Assembly: GCA_002269645.1 (NCBI GenBank)
Contig: NIVC01000572.1
Location: forward strand, 248,001-312,000
Direction: 5' to 3'
From: Macrostomum lignano
Lineage: Eukaryota
DNA length: 64,000 bases
A program made the translations under genes and the position numbers. A model generated the notes under the pieces. The model saw only the letters and a list, made by a program, of their open reading frames with translations, had not been told where the DNA came from and made no database searches. Below are positions 1-25,655 of the stretch, piece after piece; within the stretch, counting starts at the first letter, position 1; each line of letters opens with the position of its first letter.

Positions 1-40
1 GAATGATGAATAAAAAGCGTTCGAATAGGAAGATTCTCAC

Positions 41-1730
41 CTCCAGAGGCGCCCGAAAGCCAAGATATTCAGCGTAGTAGCACATTGTTGTCCAAGAGAC
101 AAACAGTTTTACAAAATGGATCTTTTTCTTCGAACTGATACAGGTCTCCTACAATGTGTTATGTATTATAATGTATTATTAAATAATTACATCAAAGAAT
201 CCTTTGAAACAGCGAATGTTCAAACAAACCCGTTCAATCTCGACGCCAACTTCGATAAGATTGTCTTCGAATTTCTTTCTATGCATCGCCGCTTTTTTTG
301 AAAAATAATCTTCCGTGTCTCTCAAGTCTTCTTCCCAGACAAGGACGTAGTCTAAAGCAAAGTGGGCTAATATTTTTTTTCTTTGCGATTTGTTCATAAT
401 TTGATTCATAATCATTTAAAGTGCAACCAAAAATATGCTCGTGAGGCGTGCGTACATAGGTACCGGTATTTGTTATGCTGAAACACAGTTTTACACGTGA
501 ACTTACCGACTCTACGAATTCCGTCCCTGAAAAAGCAAGTCTTTATTGATTCTCTAGGTGGCGGTTCACTGTCATTTGTTGCTTCACTGACTGGCTTTGG
601 GTTGGATGCAGCATTTGTTGGTTGCTTAGTAGGTACAGAGTTAGTTGGTTGCTGAGTGCGTGCAGAATTGGTTGGTTGCGGAACTAGCTTAGCCTGAGGT
701 GACTGTCGAGTCGGAGAAAAGCTCGCTTGTTGCTGCGGCGATACGGCTTGAGGTGACTGTCGAGTCGGAGAAAAGATCGCTTGTTGCTGAGGCGATCCGG
801 CTTGAGGTGACTGTCGAGTCGGAGAAAAGATCGCTTGTTGCTGAGGCGATACGGCTTGAGGTGACTGTCGAGTCGGAGAAAAGATTGCTTGTTGCTGCGG
901 CGATACGGCTTGAGGTGACTGTCGAGTCGGAGAAAAGATCGCTTGTTGCTGGGGCGATCCGGCTTGAGGTGACTGTCGAGTCGGAGAAAAGATCGCTTGT
1001 TGCTGGGGCGATCCGGCTTGAGGTGACTGTTGAGTCGGAGAAAAGATCGCTTGTTGCTGCGGCGATCCGGTTTGAGATGATTTCTTGGTTGGCGTGAACT
1101 GACTTGGTTGCTGAGGTGAAGTAGTTTGTGGCGACTGTGGGGTCGAAGGAAACTTTTCTGGTAGCTGCGCTGATGTGACTTGTGGTTGTGGCGATGACTG
1201 AGTTGAAGTTGCAGTAGCCAGAGGCGGCTGCCGAGTCGAAGGGAATGTCGCGGGTTGCTTTGAAAATGTTGCTGGTGGTGCAGATTGCCGAGTGGGGGAG
1301 AGTTTACTCTGTTGCCAAGACAATTTCGCTGGCTGATATGGTGATACGGCTTGCGGCGATTTCTGAGTCGCAGGGTATTTTCTTGGTTGCTGTGGTGTCT
1401 TAGAGAACTGAGAGAACTGCTGCTGTTGACCGATCGGGGCTTGCTGCTTAGGCGAGGCGTTCTTTGAAGGCTGCTTGGCTGAGCCGACCTTTCCTGGCTG
1501 CAAAGTTTGGGTCAATGAGACTTTTGCATATTTCAATGTAGAATGGAAAGTCTATTGAGTATTGTCATGATCGACATGCAATTTCAATTTAAATCGAATT
1601 TGAATCGATTCTAATTAGTAGAGTGGCAGCAGTGGTGGCAGCACTAAAAGGTGGCAGCAGGTGGCAGCAGGTGGCAGCAATAAAAACAACTTACCGACGC
1701 ATTTCTGTCAGCGTTCGTCCCCTTTCGCAT
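41..1730 (-). CDS. Anoctamin/TMEM16 paralog A, 5' part (continues off the left edge)
   Basis: Exons 1695-1730 (MRKGTNADRNAS), 507-1551 (S/P/Q/T-rich, ends CFFRDGIRRV), 230-351 (DYVLVWEE...KKFEDNLIEVGVEIER) and 41-148 (ETCISSKKKIHFVKLFVSWTTMCYYAEYLGFRAPLE). All junctions are GT-AG and phase-consistent. These motifs match the anoctamin N-terminal cytosolic domain. Confidence 0.9.
690..1075 (-). repeat. Coding 54-bp tandem repeat (about 7 copies) encoding QQQAIFSPTRQSPQA(V/G)SP in anoctamin A
   Basis: Unit gcttgaggtgactgtcgagtcggagaaaagatcgcttgttgctgcggcgat(a/c)cg, repeated in frame within exon 507-1551. Confidence 0.92.
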
Positions 1731-4390: not shown

Positions 4391-4399
4391 CCAGGTATT

Positions 4400-4740
4400 T
4401 ATCGATTTTCTTGGCGGCACGCTGCGGCTCATTAACCCGCCATTAACCCCCGCTCCTATTCAACCCCTCCACTCTAATATGGCTTTATTATCTTAGCCCG
4501 CGAGAGCCTCAACCCCCCCCCCCCCTATCCTCGCTTATCGATTTTCTTAGCGGCCCGCCGCAACCCATTTAACACACCCACCCGGCATCTCCCTTGCTCC
4601 TGTTCAACCCTTCCACTCTAATATGGCTTTATTATCTTAGCCCGCGAGAGCCTCAACCCCCGCTATCTCCTCTGCTTATCGATTTTAGCGATCCGCCGCA
4701 ACCCATTTAACACACCCACCCCCTTGCTCCTGTTTAACTT
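4400..4740. repeat. Imperfect tandem repeat, about 135-bp unit, about 2.5 copies
   Basis: Recurring blocks ccactctaatatggctttattatcttagcccgcgagagcctcaacccc and cttatcgatttt...gcaacccatttaacacaccc. Confidence 0.75.
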
Positions 4741-4971: not shown

Positions 4972-7900
4972 TTAAGCAAAAAAGTCAACTCTTTTAAATC
5001 GTCTGCCCAGAATGTCCCGATCGATCAGCGACTTTCTGGCCAGATATTTCTGTCGCTGGTTACGATTTTCGACTTGACTCGGCACGTCTGGTATGGCCCA
5101 GCTGACTAAACGGCTCACAGCGAATACGACTTGCTGGAATGGTTTGGATATGAGCATCCAGGTGTTTGGTCTGGCCTTAAATACACAGAAATTCCAGACG
5201 TCAAAAAAGCAACAACTCTTAACCTGAAAACTCAGCGTAAGTATAATCCTAGCGGCCATTAATTTCCAGTAGAACTCGCTGTGCTGGTGCTGGGAGAATC
5301 CGCCATTGTACCGGCACGGTTCCGATGTTGTATTGGGCGGAGCAAAGTTCAGCGTGAAATTTTTGTAACCCTCGAGGCCTTTGTTGTACAGCATTGTGTA
5401 CACAGTTGTGGGCAGAAACTCGGAAGTGAATGCCATTAGAGTGGCCTAAAATGACGAAACAAGACATAATAAGATGGTACACCTAGTCTAGGACTAGGCG
5501 AATAAAAATATTGAATGGATTGCTGATCTAGTCAACAAGGATTAAATGAATCGAATGGATTGCTAATCTAGTCAACAAGGATTGAATGAATCGAATGGAT
5601 TGCTAATCTAGTCAACAAGGATTGAATGAATCGAATGGATTGCTAATCTAGTCAACAGGGATTAAATGAATCGAATGGATTGCTACTCTAATCAACAAGG
5701 ATTAAATGAATCGCATGGATTGCTAATCTAGTCAACTAGGCCACAGCTCACATTAGAAATAGTAGCCAGATACGCGATAAACTTGAGCATAGAGAACCAA
5801 ATTCCGATGCTCTGAGCTCTCTCCGGGCGAGGCCGCCGAGTTTCCAGGACCAGCTTCCTGGCGTCCAACCGGATCTCAACCAGATTGTTGATGAGCGCGA
5901 ACAGTGGCGCGAGCGGGAAAGCCGGCACAAACAATGTGACAAAGCCGAACTGCATGACCGCTTCCAGGTATTCCCAGAACAGTCCGTTTTGGTAGGGGAT
6001 CAACGCGAAATCGGATTCCCATTGCTTGCTGGAATTTTTCTGTTCGGCAGGGAAACCCACGGATCCGCGATGGAGCAGCAAGCACAGCTTCCTTTGTTTG
6101 CGGGTTGGCACAAAAAATTGAATATTTGACATCGTCCCGCATCACCAATGCTGACGGAAATTCTGCTCATTCCGCAGACTCCTGAGAACACACAAACACG
6201 CAATTAATTACACAGGCACAGCACTCATAAACACGCTCACGCGTGTACAGTCGTGCTGACTTTCTAATCGTCAGGCATGTACAATCTCTGTGCCTTGGGG
6301 GGTTGACCCTCATGGCCATCAGAGAATCTTCATAACAAAATCCTCATCAGAGAATCCCATAACAGAATCCCCATCAGAGAATCCCCATAACAGAATCCTC
6401 ATCAGAGAATCCCCATCAGAGAATCCCCATAACAGAATCCCCATAACAGAATCCCCATCAGAGAATCCCCATCAGAGAATCCCCATCAGAGAATCCCCAT
6501 CAGAAAATCTCCATCAGAGAATCCTCATCAGAGAATCCCCATCAGAGAATCCCCATCACATAATCCTCATCAGAGAATCCTCATCAGAGAATCCCCATCA
6601 GAGAATCCCCATAACAGAATCCCCATAACAGAATCCCCATCAGAGAATCCCCATCAGAGAATCCCCATCAGAGAATCCCCATCAGAGAATCCTCATCAGA
6701 GAATCCCCATCAGAGAATCCCCATCAGAGAATCCCCATCAGAGAATCCCCATCAGAGAATCCCCATCAGAGAATCCCCATCAGAGAATCCCCATCAGAGA
6801 ATCCTCATCAGAGAATCCCCATCAGAGAATCCCCATCAGAGAATCCCCATCAGAGAATCCCCATCAGAGAATCCCCATCAGAGAATCCCCATCAGAGAAT
6901 CCCCATCAGAGAATCCCACCGGAAATTAGCGGCTCGAACTCACGGATAAAGCAATTCGCTGGCCTGGGCAAACAGCTGGTTAAAAATGAAGATAATGGCC
7001 AGGTACTGAGTCAGCTCGAACATGCAGCTGCCATTTAAGCATTCCACGAATCTGGATCCAAACAGCCTGTTGTAGTCTCCAGGTTTTCCGGCCAGACTAA
7101 AAATTAGGGCGCAAGTTTAGTGATGTTTAAAATCCCAGTTAGATATGGGACCACCTTTTATCACTTGTTAGATGCGCAATCCCCTGCTAGATACGGGATC
7201 ACCTGTTAGATACGGGATTATAATGTTAGATACGGGATAACCTGTTAGATATGGGATTATATGTTAGATACGGGTGCACCTGTTAGATACGGGATCACCT
7301 GTTAGATACGTGATTATATGTTAGACACGAGATCACTTGTTAGATACGGGATTATATGTTAGATACGGAATTATATGTTAGATACGGAATTATATGTTAG
7401 ATACGGAATTATATGTTAGATACGGAATTATATGTTAGATACGGAATTATATGTTAGATACGGAATTATATGTTAGATACGGAATTATATGTTAGATACG
7501 GGTTCACCTGTTAGATAGGGGATTCTGTTTTAGATACGGGATTATATGTTTGATGCGGGATCACATGTTAGATACGGGATCACCTGTTAGATACGGGATC
7601 ACATGTTAGATACGGGATCACCTGTTAGATACGTGATTATATGTTAGATACGAGATCACTTGTTAGATACGGGATTATATGTTAGATAGGGAATTATATG
7701 TTAGATACGGGATCACCTGTTAGATACGGGCTCACCTGTTAGATACGGGCTCACCTGTTAGATACGAAATCACCTGTTAGATACGGAATCACCTGTTAGA
7801 TACGAGATCACCTGTTAGAAACGAGATCACCTGTTAGATACGAGATCACCTGTTTAGATACGGGATCACCTGTTAGATTCGGGATCACCTGTTAGATACG

Positions 7901-9435
7901 AGATCACCTGTTTAGATATGGGATTATAGATACGGGATTATATGTTAGATACGCGATCACCTGTTAGATACGCGATCACCTGTTAGATAGGGGATCACCT
8001 GTTAGATACGAGATCACCTGCTAGATACGCGATCACCTGTTAGATACGAGATCCCTTGTTAGATACAGAGTCACCTGTCAGACTGTTGATTTCCTAGGAA
8101 TGACAAACGAAACAAACATACAAAAATAACTCACTTGGCTTTAAAAAACGCCGTATAAGAAATGGACAAATAGTAATTGAATAATTCAAACAGGAACACC
8201 TTGATGATGACCTGGTTCTCGAACTCGGTCTGAGTTCGGTGCATCTCTGCGGAAGCCAATAGGGACTAAATTTATACGCTTTTCAAGTCTATTATTAAAA
8301 TGTATTCCCCACCCCATCAAGCCCATTAGTTGAAAGACCCACCCCACTCCGTGGTCCCGAAAGCCACATAGTAGCACAGGTACTCCAGCATCAGCACTAG
8401 TAGGAAGTTCGCGCTAGCCGAAGTTGTGTTGGCTACTGACAAGGCGGCAGAGCGGAACAACTTGTTTTTGAACATTGCTGCCGTGACGACGGCTCGGAAT
8501 AGGAGCATGAGCAGCAGACAGCAGACAGATAAAAACATCTGGAGCGATAACAATAAGGATATAAATTAATTAGGTAAAATTAAGAATGGATTACCCATGA
8601 AAACGGTACCTAGGCGTACAAGCGTTGAATAGTTGTTACCGTTCCCAGAGTCGTTGCAGATAGCACAGGTGAAATAGGCAAGAAGTAACTCTAGACCACT
8701 CTAAAACGACTTGATGTCACGCTAAAAGTCGCTAAAAAGTTGTCAGTCAAAGAGTCAGTTTGAGGTTTCTTTATTGTCTGCGACTCTGAAACGAGTTGCG
8801 TCTAAAGCGCACCAAGTGTCACTTGATACGCTCGTAAATTAGAATCGCATTTCACACTAAAATAACAACTCTATTTAGTCTACTTGAGTTAGTAGAAAGT
8901 TAAGCGCCAACAAACCGATATTTTTGGACGACTTTTTTGCGACTTTTTTTACGATTCTAGAACTCACGTGACGCACTCGTGACTCAACAGTCGCCTCTCC
9001 GTCGCATCGCAGTTGTATGAGTCGTTAAAAAGTCACAAGAGCCACCTTAGCGTCAACTAGTGAGTTGGTTGACTTTAGCGATTCTTGTCACGGTAACATT
9101 TTAAACGGGATTATTAGTCTAGACATTATGAAAAAAGGATAAAAATGAATTGCTAATCTAGCCAAGAGTCCATACCAGGAACAATAAGCTCAATAATCCC
9201 ACTAGCAGCCGAGGCAATCGCTTTGCATGGGAGAAGTGCGGCTCGATCAGACCCGTAATTGGGTCCTCAGCGAATTCAGTGCACTTGGATGTGTACTCAG
9301 GCCGCGCTCGCTCTTGCATCTCGATGTAGTCCACCATGTCCCACCTGGAGGCCAGGATGGCCGACTGACGCTTCCAGCTTTCTAGGAAGCAGCAGGCTGC
9401 GGGGCAGTCAGGCGTGTCAGTCAGTCTGTCTGTCC

Positions 9436-9486
<51 letters not shown>

Positions 9487-9487
9487 A

Positions 9488-9518
<31 letters not shown>

Positions 9519-9953
9519 AGTCAGTCAGTCAATCAGTCAGTCAGTCAGTCTGTCTGTCTGTATCTGTCTGTCTTAGTGTCTGTCTGTCTTAGTGTCTTAG
9601 TGTCTGTCTGTCTGTGTTTGTGTGTGTATGTGGTCTCCGCTGTCAGTCTTTCTATCACATAACTATCCGCAGACCTTTTTCTAATTAAGAGACTCACCCC
9701 AGAAGGAGGCAAACATTGAATAGACAAGGGTGCCGTGATTATCGAATAGGTAAGAGATGAGAATATAGCCGCACATGTCGCTGAGGTACCAGTACTTGCA
9801 TGATTCCGAATCCTTATCGTCGCATAGAGGACACATCTTGAACTCGTTGTGACTGTGGCAAGTCTCCTGCCTGCATGTTTGTTTGCGTTGCAGCCAATTT
9901 TTAGCGTAAAAGTAAAATTACGGAATAGCGAGATATAGGGCAGTGACAGACAC

Positions 9954-9991
<38 letters not shown>

Positions 9992-12900
9992 TGACTGACT
10001 GACTGACTGACTGACTGACTGACTGACTGACTGACTGACTGACTGACTGACAGACAGACAGACAGACAAGAGGATTTACGAGCGTACTTACACGATTACA
10101 TTGTCGCGAAGAGTGCAACAGCCGTAGACAAACACGCCAACACCCATAACGCTGGCGGGCACCAGCCAGGTAGTGTAATGCCCTGTACAGTTTGCAACGG
10201 TTGAATTTTTTAAAAGACTCCGTATGACTTTCAACTATTTTACACTGTTTAAGTCGATGAGCTCACCGATAAAAGCGTAATAGAAGGCCACTTTCTCTCC
10301 AAAGTATTCGCGAATGTGCTCAAGTGGCTGGTACTTGTGCCAGCGGCTCCATCGTGCCCAGTATTTGTGCAGCACTTGGCGAGAATTGAGCTGATGGGCC
10401 GGTTTATCTGCTGGAATCTTCGACGGACCCTGCAGTATTGTTGACGCACTACCGAAATGACAACTATGGAAATGACACACTACCGAAATGACACACTACC
10501 GAAATGACACACTACCGAAATGACACACTACCGAAATGACACTACCGAAATGACACACTACCGAAATGACACACTACCGAAATGACACACTACCGAAATG
10601 ACACACTACCGAAATGACACACTACCGAAATGACACACTACCGAAATGACGCGCTACCAAAAAACACACTATGGAAATGACGCACTATCGAAATGTCACA
10701 CTATGGAAATGACGCACTACCGAAATGACACACTATGGAAACGACGCACTACCGAAATGACACACTATGGAAACGACGCACTACCGAAATGACACACTAT
10801 GGAAACGACGTACTACCGAAATGACGCACTATGTAAATGACGCACTACAGAAATGATACACTATGGAAATAACGCACTATGGAAATGACGCACTATGGAA
10901 ATGATGCACTACCGAAATGACACACTATGGAAAAGACGTACTATGGAAATGACACACTTCAGAAATGACTCACTTTATAAATGACACGCTTCAGAAATGA
11001 CTTACTTCATAAATTACACACTTCAGAAATGACACGCTACAGAAATGACATACTCGAAATTACAGAAACACTACAGATGACACACTGACACTACGTAAAT
11101 TCTATTCCAACAAAAATCTTCTGCAGTACTTTAGTTTCAGAATGGTACTTAAGCTGAATGTTCGTTCATTTTAACGATCTGTACTTGTCCTGGCCTACCT
11201 CATGGGGCGGAAACGCGCACGAATAAATACCCCTCTTTATCATGCTGTCCAGGCCAATCTCGGACAAATCTTTCCGGCCGTACACCTGTGTGCCCAACAC
11301 CTCGTAGGCCACTTCAAAGCGTTGAGTTGGTTTGAAGTAAGTGTCTTTGTTCTCACTGCCTACGTATCTGGAAGGAAAAATTGAAATATTCTTAGAAATA
11401 TCAATTTTCGGAAAACTTTTACAAGTCAAGTGCCAGATAAATAATCTAGATCTTGGATTTGGGCCAGATGAGAGAGGTAAGGAGATGGAATAGATGAGAG
11501 AGAACAGGAAAGAAGGGTTGGAAAATGAGAGAAGAGAGAAGAGGAGGGAAGAGAACTGAGGAGAGACACAAACCTTGAGCGGGTATCGGGTATCGTATTC
11601 AAAACTAACAAAGTGCTATTCTCACTTTTTCAACTTGGATGCTGAAAATGGGCTGGTGTAGTACTGCAGCGGTGCATTTGGAACATCCTGGTCAAACGCA
11701 AAGCTGATCCAGTCTAATGGGTTTCTGTTTTTTCGTGTATCTCCATGGCTTTGTCCTTCTCTACTTGCTGTAACGGTGACGTGAACACGGTCAACTTATT
11801 GTTTAGTTTGTTTTACTACTTAAAATGACGTTTTATTACCATAATTGGAGCACGGAAGCTCAGATACTCGGCATAGTAGCACATTGTCCTCCACGAGATA
11901 AAAAGCTTCACGTAGTGAATTCTTTTCTTTGAACTTGTGCTGACTTCCTTGATAAGATTTTATTTAGAAATGGTTCTCGATAAAATGTAAAGTTATTGAA
12001 TAATTTAATATAAAATTTTTAACTATAGGGTGCCGTGAGGTGAAAGGTGCTGAGGTGGAGGGTGCTGTGAGCTGGAGGGTGATGTAAGGTATCTAGAGTG
12101 TGTTGTTAGGTGAAGGGTGCCATGAGGTGGGTGGAGGGTGCTGTAAAGGGTGCCATGAGGTGGGTGGAGGGTGCTGTAAAGTGAAGGGTGCCATGAGGTG
12201 GGTGGAGGGTGCTGTAAAGGGTGCCATGAGGTGGGTGGAGGGTGCTGTAAAGTGAAGGGTGCCATGAGGTGGAGGGTACTGAAGGGTGAAAAGTGAGAAA
12301 TCAGAATGACGGTGGTACACATTGCAAGAAAGGACAACAGCCATAGAAAAGGCCCAGTTAAAAAAGATGATGAATAAACTCCACCCGCACTCACCCGCTC
12401 CAGTTCCACGCCAGCGCTAATAAGGTTATCTTCGAACTTCTTTCGATAGCCGTGGGCAAATCTGAACCAGTCTTTTTTCTCAGGCGACGGAACCAGATCT
12501 TCCTCCCACACGAGAACGTAGTCTGGTGTTCGATAGTGTTAATAAATAGTAATAGAAACAATAAAAACTCAATACAAACCATATTGAGGCAACACAACAA
12601 AGCAGCTTTCAGACTTACCAACCCTTCGAACCCCATCGTTGAAATAGCAAGCAGACGGGCCTTCGAAAATTTGACTGTCCAGCACAATACTTGACATCGA
12701 GTTCACTTCATCCACAGCGCTCGTGACTGCCGGACGTCTAGCATCTTTCAAACTTGAGAAAGTAAGCTTCTTAGACACGTCGCTCATCAAAGGATTCTGA
12801 GCAGAACCGGCTCGATTCGGAGACGGCTGAGTCCATGCGTCTTTTCGCATCGGCTGGACCATCGCCACATTCGGCGCCTGCCTCGCTGCATCGCCACTTT

Positions 12901-13758
12901 GGTAGGCAGCAGCAGGCGCTTTCTGACTCAATGGGCTCTGAAGCTGTCTCAAATTCTGAGACTGTCTAGCTTCTAATGATGCTTTTTCTTGCTGAAGTTG
13001 CATCGAAATCGAACTGGCATTCAGTGACATTCTAGGAGCCGTTGCAGTCGCACTCTTGCGCGGTTGATGACCTGCTGACGCGTCTGTGGCATGTTTTTGC
13101 TGAGGCGCTGACTTTGTAGCTGGCTTCCGGATCTGCGTGTTTTTTGTTTGAATATGATGTTCGTTGAGACTAGGGTGGGGTTTTCAACAGAAGGATTTTG
13201 AGGATTTGCCAGCGGGGGAGGGGCAGGGCAGAGACGAGTTGCATCCACAGGCCTAGGAGATAGGGGTAGGGGCCACCCAACAAGAGGCATGGGGTACCTA
13301 GCACCTGAGAGACAGGGTTGCCCACAACCTAGATATGTAAGAGACAGCGTCACCAACTTAATAGACTGATCGAGGCACCAACCTCAGGCAGGGACAAGGG
13401 CGCCAACCTAAGAGACGGGGTGCCAACCTAAGAGACGGGGTGCCAACCTAAGAGACAGGGTGCGCCCACGAAACATTAAATATTCGAGGTTGCAGCCAGC
13501 TCGAATTAAAAGCCCTCATACGTACGTCACTGCGCTAGAGCACCCGAGTGCGGCAGTATTGATTTGTGGCAAAAAAAAATTGCCAGTCTTCCTAACTTAA
13601 AACCACTTCGACTCTAAAGTCAATATTAAATGGCAATTAACAATTTTACTTCCCTCCTGACGACAAAAATCACAATTGCAATTTTTAAGGATAAAACGGG
13701 TAAAGGTAAAGTTTTATCTTACCGGCTTTTTCGCGCTGACTTTGATCGACTTTCGCAT
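4972..13758 (-). CDS. Anoctamin/TMEM16 paralog B (complete exon set; apparent frame lesions, possible assembly errors or young pseudogene)
   Basis: Exons 13723-13758, about 12619-13169, 12395-12522, 11840-11947, 11626-11767, 11199-11367, 10267-10429, 10092-10182, 9698-9870, 9176-9396, 8343-8538, 8135-8246, 6944-7096, 6146-6181, 5752-6091, 5224-5445 and 4972-5133. Motifs: [82 protein letters not shown]. Two exons are 1 nt out of phase and there is an in-frame TGA unless 6092-6145 is an intron. Confidence 0.88.
5514..5738. repeat. 40-bp minisatellite, about 5.5 copies (intron of anoctamin B)
   Basis: Unit gaatggattgctaatctagtcaacaaggattgaatgaatc. Confidence 0.9.
6318..6918. repeat. 14-bp minisatellite, about 40 copies (intron of B)
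   Basis: Unit atcagagaatcccc. Confidence 0.95.
7135..8080. repeat. 19-bp minisatellite, about 50 copies (intron of B)
   Basis: Unit gttagatacgggatcacct, with gttagatacggaattatat variants. Confidence 0.95.
8591..9097 (+). mobile_element. Dispersed repeat family (about 0.5 kb, MITE-like), copy 1 of 5
   Basis: Shares blocks (atgaaaacggt..., gactctaaaacgac.gatgtca, gagtcgttaaaaagtcacaagag, gcgattcttgtcacggtaac) with about 15605-16093, 19725-19939, 24938-25400 and 35765-35857. Confidence 0.7.
9413..10068. repeat. Inverted compound microsatellites (GTCT/GTCA)n at 9413-9625 and (AGAC/TGAC)n at 9945-10068 flanking exon 9698-9870
   Basis: The right block is the reverse complement of the left block, including the GTCT-GTCA-GTCT order. 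Confidence 0.9.
10445..11090. repeat. 16-bp minisatellite, about 40 copies, degenerating rightwards (intron of B)
   Basis: Unit gaaatgacacactacc. Confidence 0.93.
12025..12290. repeat. 33/38-bp G-rich minisatellite (intron of B)
   Basis: Unit gggtgccatgaggtgggtggagggtgctgtaaa(gtgaa). Confidence 0.85.
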
Positions 13759-14643: not shown

Positions 14644-17600
14644 TTATAAAGCTGCCGAATCTTCGCATACAATGTCTGAACTGTCTGACGCTCTTCTTTG
14701 ACGCACTACGTTCGAATTAATTCGATTATGCGAACGCAAAAGACTCTGCATGCTGCGCTGTTGCGGTCGTTCTTGTTGCTGATTTTCTTCTGTCTGCTGC
14801 TGCTGTTGTTTTTGTTGATCTTGAATTAGTAATTGACTCTGCCGATTATAACACTGCTGCATCACTTGCTGGCGCAACTCAGCGTCCACGAGAGCTTGCC
14901 GGCCAAGATAGTTCTGACGCTCGATTCGTTCGACCAGTTTCTTGGGCACTCTTGGGATGAAAATCAGTACGAGCCTTCGCAGTGAGAATACCAAGTGCTG
15001 TAAAGGGTGTACGGGTGCTTTTGTAAGCGCGTAAGTTAAATAGAATCGGTGAATATTGATATCACAACATGCCGAAGTTGTAGTTCAACTCGCGCAGCTT
15101 GTTGGTAAGTACGAATACCGCATATTTAAAATCATTGTGCCAACCAAACTGATACTTTCAATTCGAGTGAACATTCTACCCCGATTGCTACCAATAACTG
15201 ACATGGAATGTAAAATTACATGGCACGACGAAAGCTCGTAAGATGATCAATTTTCTATGAGTTTGATGGAATGTCATGATGCAAAGGTAAAGCACGCTCG
15301 CATAGCCTACTAAATAAAATGTAAATAAAAAAATGAATTAAACTTGCCTCGAATACAATTACAAAAGATAGCCGAACTACCAGCAGTTTCCAGTAGAATG
15401 GAGTCAAGTTTCCCGAACTGTCTCGATAGTTTCTGTACCGACACGGCTGCGATGTGGTGTTCGGCGGCGACCAAGCCAGCGAGAAGTTGGTGAAGCCGTG
15501 TGTATCTGAACTGTAATCAATTTTGTGCAGCATCCTGGCCAAGAAGTCGGACGTAAAGGCTATCAGAAAGCCCTGCATTGCAGTTGCGCTTCAAGTGTTA
15601 GCTAGCCAATAGTTGAAAACGGTTCCTAGGCCAAGAAGCGTCCTAGAGTTGCTTGCGTCTACCCAGAGTCGTTTCAGAGTCGTTGCAGGTAAAATTGGTA
15701 GAACAAGAAAGAAGTGACTCTAAGATGACTCTAAAACGACTAGATGTCAGTCACATTAAAAGTGGCCAAAAAATCGAGTAAGAGTTTTTCAGAGTCAATT
15801 TGAAGCGTTTGGTTTTTTGCGATTCTCAAACGACTTTGGGGGCAACGCAAGTTGCGTCGAAAGTGCATTTACGTCACTATGAATTCGAATCACTCTTTGA
15901 ATTATAACAACTCTATTTAGTCGACTTTTTCGCGACTCTACGATTCTGCAGTTCTTGAGATGACTAAAAAATCGCTTCATCATTGTATTGCAGTCGTTTA
16001 AGTTGTTAAAAAGTCAGAAGAGTCGCTAGAGTCTCTAAAGTTGCTAAAATGAGTTGTTTACCATGACTCTTCAGTGATTATTGCCACGGTAATATTTTCA
16101 AAGGGTTATCGTTCTATTCATTTGGCATTATATCTACCGTTCTATCCTCCTCCTTCAAAAAGCATTCATTCGACTGTTGTAAAAGAAATCCTGCACTAAT
16201 GGTAGATTGTGGATATGGTTTTGGAGATAGAATGATTAATTTCAATGTCTTCCTAAACAAAAAGAAAATTTGAACAACCCGGTTAAAAATTATCATTTCA
16301 AGTTCAACTGAACCGAAATAGCGATTAGAAGTTTAGCTTCAAAGCAAACAAGTGAGCCTTAAAATCACTTACATTAGATATAACGGACACCACAGCTATA
16401 ACGTCAAGCAGGTTGGACCACATGCCAATGCCTTGAAACTGCAGAGACAGCGGTCGGCGAGTATCCTCAATTAGTCGTTTGGCAATGATTCGAAGGGCGA
16501 GGATATTGTTGAGAAGGGCGAACAGCGGAGCCAGTGGAAAAGCGGCTACAAAAATGGTTGCAAAACCAAATTGCAGCACCAGATGCAAAAAGTCGTTCCA
16601 CAAGCCTTCGAAACTTAACAGGCAGTAGTCCGCCTCCCACGGTTTCAACTTTTGTCCGTTCAATAGCGTCGTTGAAAAACCGGTACGAATGCCTTGTATA
16701 TAGATCTTAATCCTTCTGCAGATGAAAAAGGTGATTATTTATACTCCTAGCATGGGGTTACACTCGTAGATCATAGCAAAGATACTAAAATCGACAAAAT
16801 GACCAACTTACGGCAGGATCAGATCGATGCAATTGCTGAGCGCCTGTCTGCCTATCATAATAATAGCAAGCGTGAGCGTCAGATCTAATAAACAGCCACC
16901 TTCATCGCACTCCTCTGGCCGGTAGCCAAGCAGGGAGTTGTAGTTTCCTGGGTAGCCGGAAAATCTAAAATTGGTGGCATTCGAGGCAGCGTTGCGTTGG
17001 TAACTTGAGACATTTCGTTTTTTTATGATATACTCGAGGTGTGATAGGAGTATCGTAGCATTAATTTTGAGTAGCTATTTACTTCGTACAAGCGTATGAT
17101 CAAGTTAACATAAGTAGAGGAGAGATGAAGAGAGGGAGATGAGAGAGGAGAGAGGAGAGAGGAGAGAGGAGAGAGGAGAGAGGAGAGAGGAGAGAAGAGA
17201 AAGGAGAGAGGAGAGAGGAGAGAGGAGAGAGGAGAGAGGAGAGAGGAGAGAGGAGAGAGGAGAGAGGAGAGAGGAGAGAAGAGAAAGGAGAGAGGAGAGA
17301 GGAGAGAGGAGAGAGGAGAGAGGAGAGAGGAGAGAGGAGAAAGGAGAGAGGAGAAAGGAGAGAGGAGAAAGGAGAGAGGAGAGAGGAGAGAGGAGAGAGG
17401 AGAGAAGAGAAAGGAGAGAGGAGAGAAGAGAAAGGAGAGAGGAGAAAGGAGAGAGGAGAAAGGAGAGAGGAGAGAGGAGAGAGGAGAGAGGAGAGAGGAG
17501 AGAGGAGAAAGGAGAGAGGAGAAAGGAGAGAGGACAGAGGACAGAGGAGAGAGGAGAGAGGAGAGAGGAGAGAGGAGAGAGGAGAGAGAGGAGAGAGAGG

Positions 17601-20600
17601 AGAGAGGAGAGAGGAGAGAGGAGAGAGGAGAGAGAAGAGAGGAGATTCGACTATAGAGCTGAGAAGAGACGCACACCTTAAGCGGGCCGGATTGCTCTTG
17701 TGAAGTTTGAAAGGACCCCCCGGGGGGCCGGAGTTCACCAACTCCTGCTGTAGTGAATGGGGACAGCTGAGCAAACCATGCAATGAGAAAGGATTCGAAC
17801 TGGTTAGAATTCGTTATCATCATCAGACTAACCTGCCTTTGAAGAACGCAATGTAGAATATTGACGAATAATAGTTCCAAATCTCAAATATGAATATCTT
17901 CATTGTAACCTGATCGTCAAATTCCCATTGCGTTTTGTGCGCCTCTGAAATCGGATTAACAAATTCAAACCAGAAATTGAATTAGTATATCTTTGGAAGA
18001 TTATACATCACGATTCGAGGCCGTTACTTGCCCCATTCGGTCAGTCGGTAGGCCAGCTGCTTGTACAAAACTTCCAGGGCCAGCATCAGCAGCAGATGCA
18101 GCAGAGCGCCCAAGGCGTTAGCGATTGCGCGAGCTGTCGTGAGGAGCGCCGGCACGCGAATCAGGTACACAATGACGCTCGATTGAAACGTGATTACGAG
18201 CAGGATGAAAACGATAACTATGACGAGCTGAAGTTTAATTTCGATAGAATAATATGAGCTTTCCTTTTTCCTGTTGAGATGCGTTTGCCTTCGTTTTAAA
18301 TTCCCACATGCCTCTCGCTCTTTCTGATGCAAACCGCATAAATCTCAAGTTTTCATAGGTTTCCGTTAAAAATGTCTGTCTGCTTTAAGTAACTTAAACT
18401 ATAGCACCTTTTTTGCCAGCGGATTTGGCGCCCCCCCCCCTGCACAACAGCTGGGGCGCCCCTGCCTCGGCGCGGTCCCCTAATAACTACATGTAATTTG
18501 GCGTTGGTGCTGGCGCCCCTGATGCTGGCGCCCCCTAGTGCTAAAGCCCCTGGTGCTAAAGCCCCTAGTGCTAAAGCCACTGGAGCTAAAGGTCCTGGTA
18601 CTGGAGCCTCGGGTACTAAATAAGCAACCAGAAAAAAGCCTACCATAAAAAGCAGACAAATGTAGCTGCAAATAATCCTAGGCAGTCGTCGAGTGGAAGG
18701 AAAATGCGGCTCAATGATGCCAGTGATGGGGTTCCGTCTGTGCTGGTCGCATCGCGCGGCGAAGCCAGGCCGGGGCCGGCTGATCTCAACACGATAGTTG
18801 CTCACGCCCCAGCGATGGGCGAGAGTGGCGGTGCGACGCTTCCAGAACTCCAGGAAGATCAGAGCTGATTGATTTTAAGAAAAAAATTAATTTAATACCG
18901 GTTTAATTCTCATTTACTTCGCTGCAGTCTAATGTCACTGACAGTCAAATGTCACTGACAGTCCAATGTCACTGACAGTCAAATGTCACTGACAGTCAAA
19001 TGTCACTGACTGTCAAATGTCACTGATAGTCAAATGTCACTGACAGTCAAATGTCACTGATAGTCCAATGTCGCTGACAGTCAAATGTCATTGATAGTCA
19101 AATGTCACTGACAGTCGAATGTCACTGATAGTCAAATGTCACTGACAGTCAAATGTCACTGACAGTCAAATGTCACTGACAGTCAAATTTCGTTGACCCT
19201 CACACTTTAGTGCCAATAATCTGTTACTCGAAAGTCGTATTTACAATTGATCGCCCAGTATTTTATATCAAACCACTAAGTCTTTGTTGAAGCGTTTGTT
19301 ACATGTAAGTCCATTGATTTAAGGCCAATAACATAACGCTTGAACTCACACCAGATCGACATGAAGACAGCGTAAAACACGGTGCCATAATTGTCGAAAA
19401 CGGCCGCCAACTTCAGTTTCCAGCAGATGTCGCTCAAATACCAAAACGGGCAGCCATCAGCCTCGTCGCAGAATGGGCACATTTTAAATTCCTTTCCAGC
19501 CTTGCAGGTGTTTCGGCTGCAATTGGAAAAATCGTTAAACATATGCGAACTACACGACCTATTATTGAGTTTTATGCAAACAGCAAATCAACTCACTTGG
19601 CAGCATTGAATGGCAGCGATGCCAGACCGTAAACAAAAACGAAGACGCCAACTAGGGTAGCCGGGGCAAGCCAAGTTGTGTAGAAACCTTGAAAATTAGA
19701 TTAATTTGCTTTGTAGGTTTCTGCTTGCCCAATGAAAACTGTACCCAGGAAAAAAGCGTCCCTCTCGTTGCAGGTAACATTGGTAGAACAGAAAAGAAGT
19801 GACTCCAGACGACTCTAAAACTACTTTATGTCACGCTGCAAGTCGCCAAAAAAGTCCCTAGATTCATCTCTAGACTCAGTAAAAAGTCACTACAATGAGT
19901 TGTTTGCAATGACTCGTCAGCGATTCTTGTCACGGCAACATTTTGAACGGGTTAGTGCGCTTTATCTCACCTAGCCAAGCGAAGAAGAAGGCGATCTTCT
20001 CGCCAAAGTAGTCACGCACGTGGTCAAGCGGCTGAAATTTGTACCAACAGCGCCAGTTGGCCCAGTGCAGATGGAGAAGCTGTCTCAGATTGAGTTCGGG
20101 CTTCTGCTGCTGCAGTTCAGCTGTCTCTGGCTGATTGTTCTTGCAGTTTGCATTGCAGCTTTGCCTGGTGGGCTCCCCAGACAGGCCTGGCACTTGGTAC
20201 GGTCCCTGGAAATGAAAGAAGCATGCATGTACATGCTCTCTGTCAGTGTTGGGCACCAGTCCGTTAATAAGCGTTAATCCGTTAATAAGCGTTAATAAGC
20301 GTTAAGATTTTTCATTAACGTTAACGGACTGTCGTTAAGATTTTTTTGAACTAACGGATTAACGAATTTGCGTTAAAAATTTTGTGAATTAACGATAAAT
20401 TCATCGTTAACGGTAGGGTCTATGTCAATGACCAAAGACGCAAAGAAGGAACGAAAAATAGAAGTCTTACAAGAAGTTTAAACATTACGAACGTATTTGA
20501 GCTTACCTATATGCCTAAATATAATCTCTTTATTTATGACGATGATCATACAGACGTACATGTAATTAACAACTTCTTACAAATAAACTTTAAAATAATG

Positions 20601-23600
20601 AATTAAAATAGTGTGAAACTTTATTTCTTGCGCGTGAGCATCGATCGCTTTGATTCACTTCTGTCCCAATCTTTCGCAACTTTCTGCTGCGTCTGCTAAT
20701 GGTACTGAAACAACCTTCCTATGCGTATTTAATTATGAATTTCTCGCTATTAGCTTTTAAGTTTCAAATAAAATAAGTTACTTTTTTACCATATGCTTTA
20801 CTTTTAGTAGCATTATGCATGCAAGTTTTTAAAATGATTATTTATTACTTTTTTAGCTTTCAAATCGCTTAGATGACCTCCGTGTTTCGCTAAAAAGATG
20901 GAATAGCAAAGACGTGCAATACGAAGTCTGTTTTGGAAAAAAAGTGCAAGATTTCCGTATTTTCTGTGTTAACTTTACAGATTAACGCTTATTAACGATT
21001 ATCAGTTAACTTTCAGTTAACTTAACGAAATTAGGAGTTAAAAAGTTAAGATTTTTTTGTTTTAACGCTAACGCTTTTGCTATTAACCGAAGTTAAGATT
21101 TTCATTAACGGTGCCCAACACTGCTCTCTGTGTTTTGGAATTGATGGCAGGAGAAACTCGCGCAGATCAGAGCTACATGTGCGTGTCTGGGTGTGCTTAA
21201 TGTGATATACTTTGTTTGACTCAGTTAACCTCCATTCTCCGTCCCCCGCGCGTCGCTCCGCGTACATTGTCTGTCTGTTGCATTTCTATTCAATGTACAT
21301 CGCTCAAATCCTAAATATCGACAACGATGAAATTAACTGTGGACAGAATTTTTAACCACCCTTAGTTCGCTTGCGCTAAGTCTCCGACTGGAATGTACTT
21401 TAAATAGACAAACTCGGGCAATCCTGACAGAGAACAACTCTCCCTTCCATACACCAGATTCTACTGTATATTACTTATCCTTTTGTAAGTTAACACCACA
21501 ATGATTGAAACTATCAAATACATCGGACTATAGGGGGTACTCGTACATCACATTTGTAGGTGCAACGCAGGAAAAAGTCAGTCAAATCCCTGCAGTGCCT
21601 GATCAGCTATTTGGGTACGGTCTGATAACCGTATACAGAAATCAAGGACAGCTAGCGTTTTAAAAGCTGCATTTGGCGAGCAAACCAGAGAACTGTTTCA
21701 GCTTACCTCGTGCAGCGGAAACGCGCACAGGTAAAATTCATCATTAATCATCCGATCGATACCGATTTCGCCCCTTCGAGAGTTGCCAAACAGCCGAGTG
21801 GACAGCAGCTCGTAGGTCACCAACTGGCGCTGTTTCTGGGAGAAAAAAGAGTCGCCGTTGTGTATCCCGATGAAGCTGCGGACGGATAGGCGATGGACGT
21901 TCGGAGTGAAATTATCCCAGTGACTTATTCTATGAAAATCGAACCGAAGTGCAGGGACATCAGGGCGGTAAACATATCCCTATCAGGCCATTGACCCTAC
22001 TTTTTCTAGCTATCGCTAACTCTAGAGGTACGGTTATTGCGCTCATCAGTTTTGAGAAGTGCAGAGCACTTCATCTACAACAGCACAGCCTCGCTGAACT
22101 CGGTCTAATTATACATTGCTCTGAAATTTTCTCTCTGCAGGGGGACCGCGATGCGAACACCGGCACCACCGGATCTCCCTGCGCGATACCGCAGCACCAG
22201 CTGCCCGTGGTTGCCAGGGGCTAGCAAAATGGGGGTCGACGGCTCCCCGCTGTATCCGGGTGCCCGGAGTCAAGTATAAGTACAGAATTTACTTAGAAAT
22301 GAAGCAGAGGATGGTAAGGAACGCTTGTTTGTGGTTCTGATTCTTATATGATCTTATTCTGATCTTTACGGCATGCTTTCAATGTGAGGTTGCTGGTGTC
22401 TATGGCCGAAGTATCAATTACGACTAAAGCACACACTATCCAACTCACTTGTGCATTTTAGCAGCGGAGAAGCCGCAAGTGTAATACAGCTGAGCTTTCC
22501 TTGGCACAGCTGTTCCCAGCGGAATCTCGTCCATTGGCTAAAAATCGAAAGAGAAAACGCACAGATTTTTTGAAGAGTATTTTATCTTCATTTTTCTATC
22601 TTCAGCACCAAAACTCAAACCTTCAAGGGTGCCCTTAGTTTGAGATTTTCCGCATGGCAGCACATGGCCTCCCAGGTGACGTAGAGCTTGAGAAAGTGCA
22701 ACCGTTTTGTTGACGTCTCCCTTACAGCCTGTGATGTAGGTTAGCAGAGTCATTGTGGATAGATAGATTAGGTAGGGAAACTGTGAACTATAGTGTGAAT
22801 GGCTAAAATAAGCGGCAGGAAGGCTCGTGAAGCTCCCTTGGTTAGAAAAACAGCAGCAATTTTTAAAGCCAACCTTCTCCATTTCTACTCCGGCTTGTTT
22901 CAGATGGTAGTGAAAATTTTGTCTGCACTTCATGCTTCTCTCGGTTTGCAGCGTCTCGGGTGCATTGGGATCTTCTTCCCACACCAGCACGTAGTCTGAG
23001 GGGTCGGGGGGGAGCAGTTGTGAGAGCGACTTTCATTTGGGGCTAGGGGGTCGCTGACTGACTCAATCTCAATTAGGGGGTCGCTGACTGACTCAATCTC
23101 AATCAGGGGGTCACTGACTGACTCAATCTCAATTAGGGGGTCGCTGACTGACTCAATCTCAATTAGGGGGTCGCTGACCGACTCAATCTCAATCGGGGGT
23201 CACTGACTGACTCAATCTCAATTAGGGGGTCGCTGACTGACTCAATCTCAATTAGGGGGTCGCTGACTGACTTAGTGTCAATTTGGGGGGTCACTGAGCG
23301 ACTCAACCTCAATCAGGGGGTCGCTGACTGACTCAATCTCAATCGGGGGTCACTGACTGACTCAATCTCAATTAGGGGGTCGCTGACTGACTTAGTGTCA
23401 ATTTGGGGGGTCACTGAGCGACTCAACCTCAATCAGGGGGTCACTGACCGACTCAATCTCAATCAGGGGGTCACTGACCGACTCAATCTCAATCAGGGGG
23501 TCACTGACTGACTTAATCTCAATCAGGGGTCACTGACCGACTTAATCTCAATCAGGGGTCACTGACCGACTTAATCTCAATCAGGGGGTCACTGACCGAC

Positions 23601-23881
23601 TTAATCTCAATCAGGGGTCACTGACCGACTCAATCTCAATGAGGGATCTCTAGCACTGACCTACTCAGTCTCTCAACAGGTGAAAGAACTTCACTACTGG
23701 AACTACACGTAGAGAATTTCACGAGTATATTCACAGACCCATCTCACTCACCTATTTGCCTAATTCCATCATCAAAATAATAGCCAAACTGATGTTGATC
23801 TCGACTAGACTGGACAAAGACTGATCCTTGGTCGCTGAGCCGAGAATTCTGCCGGTCCAAGGAGACCGGCATTTGCTTCAT
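14644..23881 (-). CDS. Anoctamin/TMEM16 paralog C, 15 exons, 904 aa, degenerate Ca2+-binding site
   Basis: Exons 23752-23881, 22874-22995, 22621-22728, 22449-22537, 21707-21875, 19971-20205, 19597-19687, 19350-19516, 18644-18864, 18032-18227, 17833-17944, 16812-16964, 16373-16715, 15348-15572 and 14644-14997 sum to 2715 nt with consistent phases. Several exon lengths equal those of B or A (108, 169, 91, 221, 196, 112, 153 as in B; 122 as in A). Motifs: [72 protein letters not shown]. The start ATG is uncertain. Confidence 0.92.
17110..17747 (-). mobile_element. hAT(Charlie)-like MITE end carrying a (GGAGAGA)n tract
   Basis: The reverse-complement terminus caggagttggtgaactccggccc is followed by the family block ...ctgagaagagac.ca.accttaagcgggccggatt... 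shared with 11440-11585, 31640-31770, 55304-56080, 59563-59950 and 60110-60444. Confidence 0.65.
18930..19186. repeat. 17-bp minisatellite, about 15 copies (intron of C)
   Basis: Unit aatgtcactgacagtca, containing the internal palindrome tgtca-c-tgaca. Confidence 0.93.
20244..21123. mobile_element. Non-autonomous hAT element, 880 bp (intron of C)
   Basis: Perfect 14-bp TIR cagtgttgggcacc / ggtgcccaacactg, 8-bp TSD ctctctgt (20236-20243 and 21124-21131), and many subterminal cgttaa motifs. No ORF. Confidence 0.93.
23045..23640. repeat. 30-bp minisatellite, about 20 copies (intron of C)
   Basis: Unit gggggtcgctgactgactcaatctcaatta. Confidence 0.93.
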
Positions 23882-25404: not shown

Positions 25405-25655
25405 ATGGAATGTGTCATGGAGACTCCAGTGTCATGGAGTCTCTCATGGAATGTCAGTTTGAGTCTCTCATGGAATGTCAGTTTGAGTCTCTCATGGAAT
25501 GTCAGTTTGAGTCTCTCATGGAATGTCGGCTTGAGTCTCTCATGGAATGTCGGCTTGAGTCTCTCATGGAATGTCAGTTTGAGTCTCTCATGGAATGTCA
25601 GTTTGAGTCTCTCACGGAATGTTAGTTTGAGTCTCTCTCGCGGAATGTCATTTTA
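25405..25655. repeat. 24-bp minisatellite, about 10 copies
   Basis: Unit gagtctctcatggaatgtcagttt, growing from the end of the dispersed-repeat copy at 24938-25400. Confidence 0.9.

What the first reader, a model, noticed from the sequence alone, without database searches (positions are those of the whole stretch)
14940..16830. Intact anoctamin paralog C has lost the family-defining Ca2+-binding residues
Seen: against B, TM7 EYLE becomes DFLH, TM8 NNLVEIRLDARK becomes [12 protein letters not shown] (E to A, D to I), TM6 E becomes D, and the conserved IPDVP after TM10 becomes IPRVP (AGA at 14950-14952). The 15-exon, 904-aa frame has no stops and keeps the flanking motifs. Knowledge: these positions correspond to mouse TMEM16A E654, E702, E705, E734 and D738 (main site) and D884 (third site); the vacant acidic site acts as an electrostatic gate, and the fold-related OSCA/TMEM63 and TMC channels lack this site and are mechanosensitive. 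Inference: C is a Ca2+-independent anoctamin (constitutive, mechano- or lipid-gated, or a regulatory dimer partner). Loss at two separate sites argues for selection rather than decay.
Basis: partly seen in the sequence, partly recalled or inferred. Interest (0 to 1): 0.82.

Follow-up and report, generated by a model that had tools for sequence, protein, structure and literature searches.

The report
Flatworm anoctamin lacking its calcium sites
One of three neighbouring anoctamin-7-like genes of the flatworm Macrostomum lignano is intact and appears in a transcript-derived annotation, yet it has lost the acidic residues that let every other animal anoctamin sampled here sense calcium, so it probably works without calcium gating, as yeast IST2 does.

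Summary
The window is Macrostomum lignano scaffold NIVC01000572.1. Paralog C (minus strand, 23881-14644) has 15 exons and 904 aa, identical to GenBank PAA80633.1, whose annotation derives from RNA-seq transcripts.

Against mouse TMEM16A, C has E654D, E702D, E705H, E734A and D738I. On alpha10 it has D879L and D884R, and N650 is S. About 270 of 292 retrieved animal anoctamins read EEEED at the five main-site positions. Only C and its copies read DDHAI.

C is not decaying. It keeps more family-conserved columns than neighbour B. AlphaFold gives a confident TMEM16 fold. The site codons are at least 15 nucleotide changes from ancestral codons, yet the 2.7-kb frame is open. Differences from a second copy avoid conserved positions.

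Loss of calcium coordination is sound. "Two sites argue for selection" is weak, because neighbours A and B have also eroded the third site and the alpha6 asparagines.

The closest precedent is yeast IST2, a calcium-site-less, constitutively active scramblase. What C actually does (constitutive transport, another gate, or a silent dimer partner) is untested. I rate it a new variant of a known kind, of moderate interest.

The parts
14644..23881 (-). Paralog C, an ANO7/TMEM16G-like gene with 15 exons encoding 904 aa (= PAA80633.1, BOX15_Mlig004871g1). Exons: 23881-23752, 22995-22874, 22728-22621, 22537-22449, 21875-21707, 20205-19971, 19687-19597, 19516-19350, 18864-18644, 18227-18032, 17944-17833, 16964-16812, 16715-16373, 15572-15348, 14997-14644.
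   Evidence: The model built from the sequence translates exactly to P0122. Pfam Anoctamin 2.2e-139 and Anoct_dimer 7.9e-50. AlphaFold2 pLDDT 82.4, pTM 0.80. Foldseek TM-score 0.85-0.86 to TMEM16F and TMEM16A.
16812..16964 (-). Exon 12, encoding alpha6. G585 (hinge G644) is kept. S590 replaces N650, N591 keeps N651, and D594 replaces E654 (codon 16825-16823).
16373..16715 (-). Exon 13, encoding alpha7 and alpha8. D639 replaces E702 (16594-16592). H642 replaces E705 (16585-16583). N667 keeps N730. A671 replaces E734 (16498-16496). I675 replaces D738 (16486-16484).
14644..14997 (-). Exon 15, encoding alpha10 and the C-terminal tail. L798 replaces D879(a) (14967-14965). R803 replaces D884(a) (AGA, 14952-14950). 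A Q-rich, low-confidence tail follows.
18644..18864 (-). Exon 9, encoding alpha2 with the other half of the third site. Both residues are retained: E376 (= E425) and K379 (= K428).
4972..13030 (-). Paralog B, used as the comparison gene. It keeps the main-site acids E, E, E, E, D. It has N650A, N651Q, hinge G644F and D879(a)S. There is a 1-nt frameshift in exon 4 near 11735.
1..1551 (-). The first three exons of paralog A. The full protein is P0250, 1131 aa, encoded on the same scaffold. Main site E, D, E, E, D. Third site K, K, N, N.

Best explanation
C is a functional, selectively maintained, fast-evolving ANO7/TMEM16G-like paralog of Macrostomum lignano. It lies in an old tandem trio (A, B, C).

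Its orthosteric two-Ca2+ site between alpha6, alpha7 and alpha8 has been dismantled: only two carboxylates and a histidine remain of five carboxylates. The alpha10 carboxylates of the allosteric third site have been replaced by Leu and Arg. The protein keeps the full TMEM16 fold and dimerisation domain, but it cannot be switched on by cytosolic Ca2+ in the canonical way.

Most likely mechanism (inferred, not shown): removing the negative charges removes both the ligand site and the apo-state electrostatic repulsion and barrier. C would then act as a Ca2+-independent TMEM16 subunit. By analogy with yeast IST2, the favoured form is a constitutively or otherwise-regulated lipid scramblase or leak pathway, working alone or as a heterodimer with A, B or a canonical ANO7.

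Shown here: gene integrity, presence in a transcript-derived annotation, residue losses, fold, rarity, and constraint. Inferred: Ca2+ independence, from mutagenesis of other family members. Speculative: the actual activity.
For: Integrity and transcription:
- The 15-exon, 904-aa ORF equals PAA80633.1.
- GenBank models of this assembly come from StringTie/TACO RNA-seq transcripts plus TransDecoder (PMC5730564). The model includes two GC-AG introns.

Residue losses.

Rarity:
- 268 of 292 retrieved anoctamins read EEEED at the five main-site positions.
- Only C and its copies read DDHAI.

Targeted loss rather than general decay:
- 5 of 5 acidic site columns are changed, against 58 of 283 other conserved columns (p = 4.4e-4).
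- C mismatches 63 of 288 conserved columns. B mismatches 79 of 288.

Long-term constraint:
- C against B gives pN 0.38 with synonymous sites saturated (pS 0.77).
- The eight altered site codons need at least 15 nucleotide changes, 0.62 per site. By contrast, 5% random substitution leaves the ORF open in only 0.4% of simulations.

Recent constraint: 20 of 774 residues differ between C and the second copy C'. Only 6 of the 20 fall in family-conserved columns, against 69% expected (p = 3.5e-4).

Fold: pLDDT 82, pTM 0.80, TM-score 0.85 to TMEM16F and TMEM16A.

Functional inference:
- Neutralising the orthosteric residues severely diminishes Ca2+ activation of TMEM16A (stated in PMC7786149, citing Tien 2014 and Yu 2012).
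- D879A/D884A abolishes third-site sensing (PMC7786149).
- IST2 has three of the five acids substituted on alpha7 and alpha8 and is a constitutive scramblase (PMC12618243).
Against: - There are no functional data of any kind.
- No ortholog from another species was found. The next best hit is 44-49% identical. Conservation of the loss across species and a proper dN/dS could therefore not be tested.
- No expression level or tissue was found in four papers' supplements.
- Unlike IST2, C has no Lys standing in for Ca2+ at the main site, and it keeps the alpha6 hinge Gly.
- In TMEM16A, neutralising site residues gives channels that stay closed rather than open (own knowledge). Inactivity is therefore as plausible as constitutive activity.
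- The constraint tests are indirect. They rest on protein-level differences and on one partly mis-annotated model, P0121.
- The whole A/B/C clade evolves fast (distance about 0.8 to canonical ANO7, against 0.37 between canonical flatworm and oyster ANO7).
Confidence: 0.6

Rival explanations
1. C is a non-conducting, non-scrambling subunit. It would be a Ca2+-blind regulatory or dominant-negative dimer partner for A, B or canonical ANO7, or a structural or tethering protein, retained for its fold rather than for transport.
For: The dimerisation domain and alpha10 are well conserved and confidently modelled. The three paralogs are adjacent on one strand and all are annotated from transcripts. 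Neutralising site residues in TMEM16A yields poorly activatable channels (PMC7786149, citing Tien 2014 and Yu 2012). C lacks the Lys mimic that holds IST2 open.
Against: TMEM16 subunits gate independently in concatemers (title and summary of PMC5089934, seen). A silent subunit would therefore halve activity rather than regulate it. Transmembrane core columns are conserved as well as in B. No co-expression or interaction data exist.
Confidence: 0.22
2. C is a functionless relic: a young or slowly decaying duplicate in a polyploid, duplication-rich genome. Its ORF happens to be still open, and the site losses are simple decay.
For: The genome is highly redundant (PMC5730564). The A/B/C clade is fast evolving. 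Neighbour B carries a frameshift in this haplotype. No orthologs were found.
Against: - The ORF of 2715 nt and 28 splice sites are intact in two copies.
- The site codons are at least 0.62 changes per site away from ancestral codons, yet 5% random substitution would already close the ORF in 99.6% of trials.
- Differences between C and C' avoid conserved columns (p = 3.5e-4).
- C is less diverged than B at conserved columns.
- C is transcribed and spliced according to the annotation.
Confidence: 0.1
3. C still senses Ca2+ or another cation through the remaining ligands (D594, D639, N591, N667, H642) or through substitute residues, with altered affinity or selectivity. Possibilities include one low-affinity Ca2+, Zn2+ through His, or pH sensitivity.
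For: Two carboxylates, two Asn and a His remain at the site. The anoctamin-superfamily survey proposes that alternative nearby residues bind Ca2+ in families lacking the canonical ones (PMC5868767).
Against: Both alpha8 ligands are replaced by apolar residues (A, I). The extra alpha7 acid before E702 is N in C, and no new acidic residue appears nearby. Single neutralisations at these positions already cripple Ca2+ activation in TMEM16A (PMC7786149).
Confidence: 0.08

Closest known systems
ANO7 / TMEM16G subfamily of metazoan anoctamins
   Same: Best hits across Metazoa are anoctamin-7-like proteins at 41-49% identity over nearly the full length. C has the same two Pfam domains and 10-helix fold. 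A preprint already lists PAA80633.1, PAA80632.1 and PAA80631.1 as three linked TMEM16G genes of M. lignano (10.1101/2022.04.22.489151).
   Different: All other retrieved ANO7-like proteins, including three canonical M. lignano paralogs, keep E, E, E, E, D and the alpha10 D..D. C has D, D, H, A, I and L..R. C, B and A sit on very long branches.
Yeast IST2 (Saccharomycetaceae TMEM16 homolog)
   Same: It is a natural TMEM16 protein in which three of the five conserved acidic residues, on alpha7 and alpha8, are substituted, so the regulatory Ca2+ site is absent. It is a constitutively active, Ca2+-independent scramblase (PMC12618243). The position equivalent to E705 (nhTMEM16 E506) is substituted in both: K in IST2, H in C.
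   Different: IST2 keeps an alpha8 Asp and uses the Lys as a built-in cation bridging alpha6 and alpha8. It has also lost alpha4 glycines. C has lost both alpha8 acids and has no Lys at the main site. IST2 is fungal and carries a long tethering tail. The two losses are independent, and C's activity is unknown.
Engineered Ca2+-site mutants of mouse TMEM16A (E702/E705/E734/D738 neutralisations; D879A/D884A)
   Same: The same positions are altered. The mutants show that these residues are needed for micromolar Ca2+ activation, and that the two alpha10 aspartates are needed for third-site sensing (PMC7786149).
   Different: They are laboratory point mutants in a channel paralog. C carries all changes together, in a different subfamily, with hundreds of other substitutions that may compensate.
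OSCA/TMEM63 and TMC relatives
   Same: They share the fold superfamily and lack the canonical acidic Ca2+ site (PMC5868767).
   Different: They are separate, anciently diverged families. C is a bona fide anoctamin by sequence. Nothing here indicates mechanosensitivity.

Membership tests
Anoctamin / TMEM16 family (Pfam PF04547) | Full-length match to the Anoctamin transmembrane domain profile | tested here: met
   PF04547 E = 2.2e-139, profile positions 1-460 of 460, residues 269-815
Anoctamin / TMEM16 family (Pfam PF04547) | N-terminal cytosolic anoctamin dimerisation domain (PF16178) | tested here: met
   PF16178 E = 7.9e-50, positions 1-221 of 221
Anoctamin / TMEM16 family (Pfam PF04547) | Ten-helix TMEM16 fold | tested here: met
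   AlphaFold2 pLDDT 82.4, pTM 0.80. Foldseek top hits are TMEM16F and TMEM16A, with target TM-score 0.83-0.86 and E about 1e-41.
Ca2+-activated anoctamins (functional class: CaCC or Ca2+-activated scramblase) | Five acidic residues on alpha6-alpha8 that coordinate two Ca2+ (E654, E702, E705, E734, D738 in mTMEM16A) | tested here: not met
   C has D, D, H, A, I. Three carboxylates are lost outright.
Ca2+-activated anoctamins (functional class: CaCC or Ca2+-activated scramblase) | Third Ca2+ site between alpha2 and alpha10 (E425, K428, D879, D884) | tested here: not met
   C has E, K, L, R. The D879A/D884A double mutant abolishes sensing in TMEM16A.
Ca2+-activated anoctamins (functional class: CaCC or Ca2+-activated scramblase) | Currents or scrambling activated by cytosolic Ca2+ | not testable with these tools
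   Needs electrophysiology or scrambling assays.
ANO7 / TMEM16G subfamily | Closest relatives are ANO7 orthologs, and the protein groups with them in a tree | tested here: inconclusive
   All top hits are anoctamin-7-like, and the preprint classifies the protein as TMEM16G. In my NJ tree, A, B and C form a very long-branched group outside the canonical ANO7 cluster. This may be long-branch attraction.
IST2-like constitutive TMEM16 scramblases | Regulatory Ca2+ site absent through substitution of alpha7 and alpha8 acids | tested here: met
   E705H, E734A, D738I, compared with the IST2 description.
IST2-like constitutive TMEM16 scramblases | Basic side chain replacing Ca2+ and bridging alpha6 and alpha8 | tested here: not met
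   C has His, not Lys, at the E705 position, and no acidic partner remains on alpha8.
IST2-like constitutive TMEM16 scramblases | Ca2+-independent scrambling in liposomes | not testable with these tools
   Needs purified protein.

The most novel reading that the evidence does not exclude
C is the first natural metazoan TMEM16 that works without Ca2+. It would be either a constitutively open scramblase or leak pathway, or one gated by something else (pH or metal through His642, lipids, tension). The A/B/C trio would then be a natural allelic series of graded Ca2+-site erosion: A has lost the third site only, B has lost the hinge glycine and the alpha6 Asn shell, and C has lost both sites. Arg803 at the D884 position might stand in for the third-site Ca2+ by pairing with Glu376. 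Together the trio shows how Ca2+ gating can be evolved away in this fold.
Probability: 0.25. Interest if true: 0.7.

Novelty: new variant of a known kind. Interest (0 to 1): 0.5.

Why it matters
Ca2+ binding on alpha6-alpha8 is treated as the defining switch of animal anoctamins. A survey of 412 invertebrate TMEM16 proteins states that the five Glu/Asp are well conserved, and it lists this very protein without noting the exception.

A naturally maintained animal paralog without the switch, next to two paralogs with partial erosion, offers a ready-made comparative system. It can be used to ask what the TMEM16 fold does when Ca2+ gating is removed, and which compensating changes are needed. The only characterised precedent is fungal IST2.

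M. lignano has published transgenesis (PMC5730564), so knock-down or transgenic tests of function look feasible.

The finding does not overturn anything. Loss of the site is known to be possible, and the function of C is unknown.

Tried and rejected
- My first hand-built 13-exon model skipped two N-terminal exons. A degenerate-looking stretch at 22150-22030 made me suspect a decayed exon 3 and a pseudogene. tblastn with P0122 showed the true exons 3 and 4 at 22728-22621 and 22537-22449, so the pseudogene idea was dropped.
- The first homolog search used a 320-aa fragment and returned only proteins of 560 aa or less and at most 50% identity. The tool seems to limit hit length relative to the query. 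The full-length query found the species and the gene.
- dN/dS between C and B is uninformative because synonymous sites are saturated (pS 0.77).
I used the distribution of amino-acid differences instead.
- I searched for expression data under 'Mlig004871' or 'anoctamin'. There were no full-text hits. The supplements of three M. lignano papers held nothing, and a fourth paper held no supplement text.
- I looked for an alternative canonical exon 13 inside C's introns. tblastn with canonical paralogs finds only the C and B exons.
- The AlphaFold model could not be used for site geometry or groove state, because coordinates are not exposed. Foldseek scores do not discriminate open from closed templates.
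- The representative-library search and the second structure job were not used. Orthologs more than 50% identical would be collapsed into one representative and add nothing.
Full report
**What the window is.** A full-length search with the C protein returned Macrostomum lignano proteins as the only close hits. P0122 (PAA80633.1, BOX15_Mlig004871g1, 904 aa) is the top full-length match. An exact look-up places that protein on scaffold NIVC01000572.1 of assembly GCA_002269645.1.

Three anoctamin genes lie head to tail on the minus strand:
- A: only its first three exons are in the window (1-1551). The full protein is P0250, 1131 aa.
- B: 13030-4972.
- C: 23881-14644.

A preprint on metazoan TMEM16 evolution already lists PAA80633.1, PAA80632.1 and PAA80631.1 as three linked TMEM16G (ANO7) genes of M. 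lignano. It says nothing about their Ca2+ sites.

**Checking the observation.** I rebuilt the gene from the raw sequence. My first 13-exon attempt missed two small N-terminal exons, and I briefly suspected a decayed exon. tblastn with P0122 located the true exons. The final 15-exon model has 13 GT-AG introns and 2 GC-AG introns, no stops, and translates to exactly P0122.

HMMER alignments to solved mouse TMEM16A chains give the residue mapping without ambiguity for alpha7, alpha8 and alpha10. An alignment with canonical ANO7 proteins, which have the same alpha6 length as C, fixes alpha6.

| mTMEM16A residue | Residue in C | Status |
|---|---|---|
| N650 | S590 | changed |
| N651 | N591 | kept |
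| E654 | D594 | conservative change |
| E702 | D639 | conservative change |
| E705 | H642 | lost |
| N730 | N667 | kept |
| E734 | A671 | lost |
| D738 | I675 | lost |
| E425 (third site) | E376 | kept |
| K428 (third site) | K379 | kept |
| D879 (third site, 'a' numbering) | L798 | lost |
| D884 (third site, 'a' numbering) | R803 (AGA, 14952-14950) | lost |

D884 and D879 follow the 'a' isoform used by Le & Yang, and correspond to D888 and D883 in the 960-aa 'ac' numbering used for the other residues.

The same residues appear in an independent gene model from the older assembly (P0241). The alpha6, alpha8 and alpha10 residues also appear in a second copy that differs by about 2.6% (P0121). 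Assembly error is therefore very unlikely.

**Is it unusual?** Among the 292 anoctamin sequences retrieved in three searches, 268 read E-E-E-E-D at the five acidic positions. Six A-type M. lignano proteins read E-D-E-E-D. A few fragments are incomplete or vary at the alpha6 position. Only C and its copies read D-D-H-A-I.

Three canonical M. lignano ANO7-like paralogs keep every ligand.

In an alignment of 109 full-length ANO7-like proteins there are 288 columns that are at least 95% conserved. All five acidic site columns are changed in C, against 58 of the other 283 (Fisher p = 4.4e-4).

**Is C alive or decaying?** Seven lines of evidence point to a living gene.
- GenBank models for this assembly are not ab initio predictions. 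They are StringTie/TACO transcripts from RNA-seq with TransDecoder ORFs (PMC5730564). A 15-exon model that uses two GC-AG introns fits that origin.
- C differs from the family consensus at 63 of 288 conserved columns. Its neighbour B, which keeps the acidic site, differs at 79. C is thus not more eroded than a Ca2+-site-bearing sister.
- Between C and B, synonymous sites are saturated (pS 0.77) while pN is 0.38. The duplication is therefore old and both lineages were constrained on average.
- The eight altered ligand codons need at least 15 nucleotide changes from any ancestral-type codon, 0.62 per site. The loss is therefore old or was driven. In simulation, 5% random substitution leaves this ORF open only 0.4% of the time.
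- The 20 amino-acid differences between C and the second copy C' avoid family-conserved columns: 6 of 20 against 69% expected, p = 3.5e-4. The control pair B and B' behaves the same way.
- AlphaFold2 with a 91-sequence alignment gives a confident model (pLDDT 82.4, pTM 0.80). It superposes on TMEM16F and TMEM16A with target TM-scores of about 0.85.
- Pfam matches to both anoctamin domains are full length.

These tests are indirect. No ortholog from another species exists in the searched database, since the next hit is 44-49% identical. No DNA for C' was reachable. A proper dN/dS therefore remains to be done.

**Context that changes the interpretation.** The trio as a whole is derived. Kimura distances of C and B to canonical ANO7 are about 0.8. 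The distance between canonical M. lignano ANO7 and oyster ANO7 is 0.37.

Each paralog has a different lesion of the Ca2+ apparatus.

| Paralog | Main-site acids | Third site | Alpha6 Asn shell and hinge |
|---|---|---|---|
| A | kept (E, D, E, E, D) | lost (E425K, D879N, D884N) | N650V, N651Q |
| B | kept (E, E, E, E, D) | D879S | N650A, N651Q, hinge G644F |
| C | D, D, H, A, I | D879L, D884R | N650S |

That does not follow. Third-site erosion is common to the clade, and after the first disabling change at the main site the other ligands are free to drift. What can be said is that the rest of the protein stayed under selection.

**How it most likely works.** From established mutagenesis, neutralising the orthosteric residues severely diminishes Ca2+ activation of TMEM16A, and D879A/D884A abolishes third-site sensing (PMC7786149). 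C carries apolar residues at both alpha8 ligands, His at E705, and Leu and Arg on alpha10. Ca2+ gating through the known sites is therefore very improbable (inference).

The best natural precedent is yeast IST2. Three of its five acids on alpha7 and alpha8 are substituted, and a Lys at the E705-equivalent position replaces Ca2+. The protein scrambles lipids constitutively (PMC12618243). C shares substitution of the same helices and the same alpha7 position. It lacks the Lys and any alpha8 acid, and it keeps the alpha6 hinge glycine.

My estimates:
- Functional, Ca2+-blind TMEM16 subunit of some kind: the sum of the best explanation (0.6) and the silent-partner rival (0.22), about 0.8.
- Within that, constitutive or otherwise-gated transport is slightly favoured.
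- Silent or regulatory dimer partner: about 0.2.
- Functionless relic: about 0.1.
- Residual cation sensing through D594, D639 and H642: below 0.1.

Nothing supports mechanosensitivity specifically.

**Novelty.** The gene is annotated as a hypothetical protein and has been catalogued as a TMEM16G paralog. I found no report of the site loss in searches of the literature library. Loss of the Ca2+ site in a TMEM16 protein is a known phenomenon in fungi. This is therefore a new variant of a known kind: an independent, animal, ANO7-lineage case with different substitutions, embedded in a graded series of paralogs.

Noticed in passing
window 11767-11626 (B exon 4, minus strand), frameshift near 11735/11734: Paralog B has a 1-nt frameshift relative to the other copy B' (P0121 reads ...AMELHRKSRNPLDW...). 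GenBank annotates only a 625-aa N-terminally truncated ORF (P0247, BOX15_Mlig001965g5, window 11243-4972). It could be a real lesion in this haplotype or an assembly indel.
   Followed up: partly
window 4972-13030 (B) and protein P0250 (A; exons 1-3 at window 1-1551): The neighbours show graded erosion of Ca2+ ligands. A has third-site E425K, D879N and D884N, plus N650V and N651Q. B has the alpha6 hinge change G644F, K645N, N650A, N651Q and D879S. Both keep the main-site carboxylates.
   Followed up: partly
window 18031-18026 and 15347-15342 (minus strand): Two of C's 14 introns (introns 10 and 14) have GC-AG boundaries with the donor GCAAGT. The homologous B introns have GT donors (GTGGGT, GTTAAG).
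   Followed up: partly
window about 2000-4400 (minus-strand ORFs, GC 62%): A GC-rich, retroelement-like block of long ORFs lies between A exon 1 and the 3' end of B. The older-assembly gene model P0241 (2505 aa) fuses C, B, this element and A into one protein. P0121 fuses C' and B'.
   Followed up: no
window 17100-17650 (C intron 11); 9400-10100 (B introns); 23030-23530; 25400-25650; 28000-28570: Long microsatellite and minisatellite arrays (CTCTCC-type, GTCTGTCA-type and others) fill introns and intergenic DNA around the anoctamin genes.
   Followed up: no
window 19700-19900 (C intron 6) and 15640-15780 (C intron 13): Both introns share a short repeated element (…TTTTAGAGTC…CACTTCTTT…TTCTACCAAT…TACCTGCAACGA…), probably a dispersed MITE-like repeat.
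   Followed up: no
window 52187-59103: A satellite array several kilobases long gives spurious ORFs of up to 1038 aa in several frames.
   Followed up: no
window 33689-34150 (-), 35967-36650 (-), 43908-45200 (+), 61372-62493 (+) and 57008-57538 (+), 26024-26794 (+): Other gene fragments: a chromodomain protein (Pfam Chromo 7e-18), a tetraspanin (2.5e-14), a rhodopsin-type GPCR (2e-8), and a DXD-motif glycosyltransferase (2e-9). The glycosyltransferase's first ~164 residues are duplicated identically 4.4 kb upstream. A Cys-rich secreted-looking ORF has no Pfam match.
   Followed up: partly
window 22150-22030 (C intron 4, minus strand): This stretch loosely resembles anoctamin exon 3 when read across shifted frames (…EVLC…, …VPLEL…). 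It first misled me into suspecting a decayed exon. It may be a relic of an exon duplication or a chance resemblance.
   Followed up: partly
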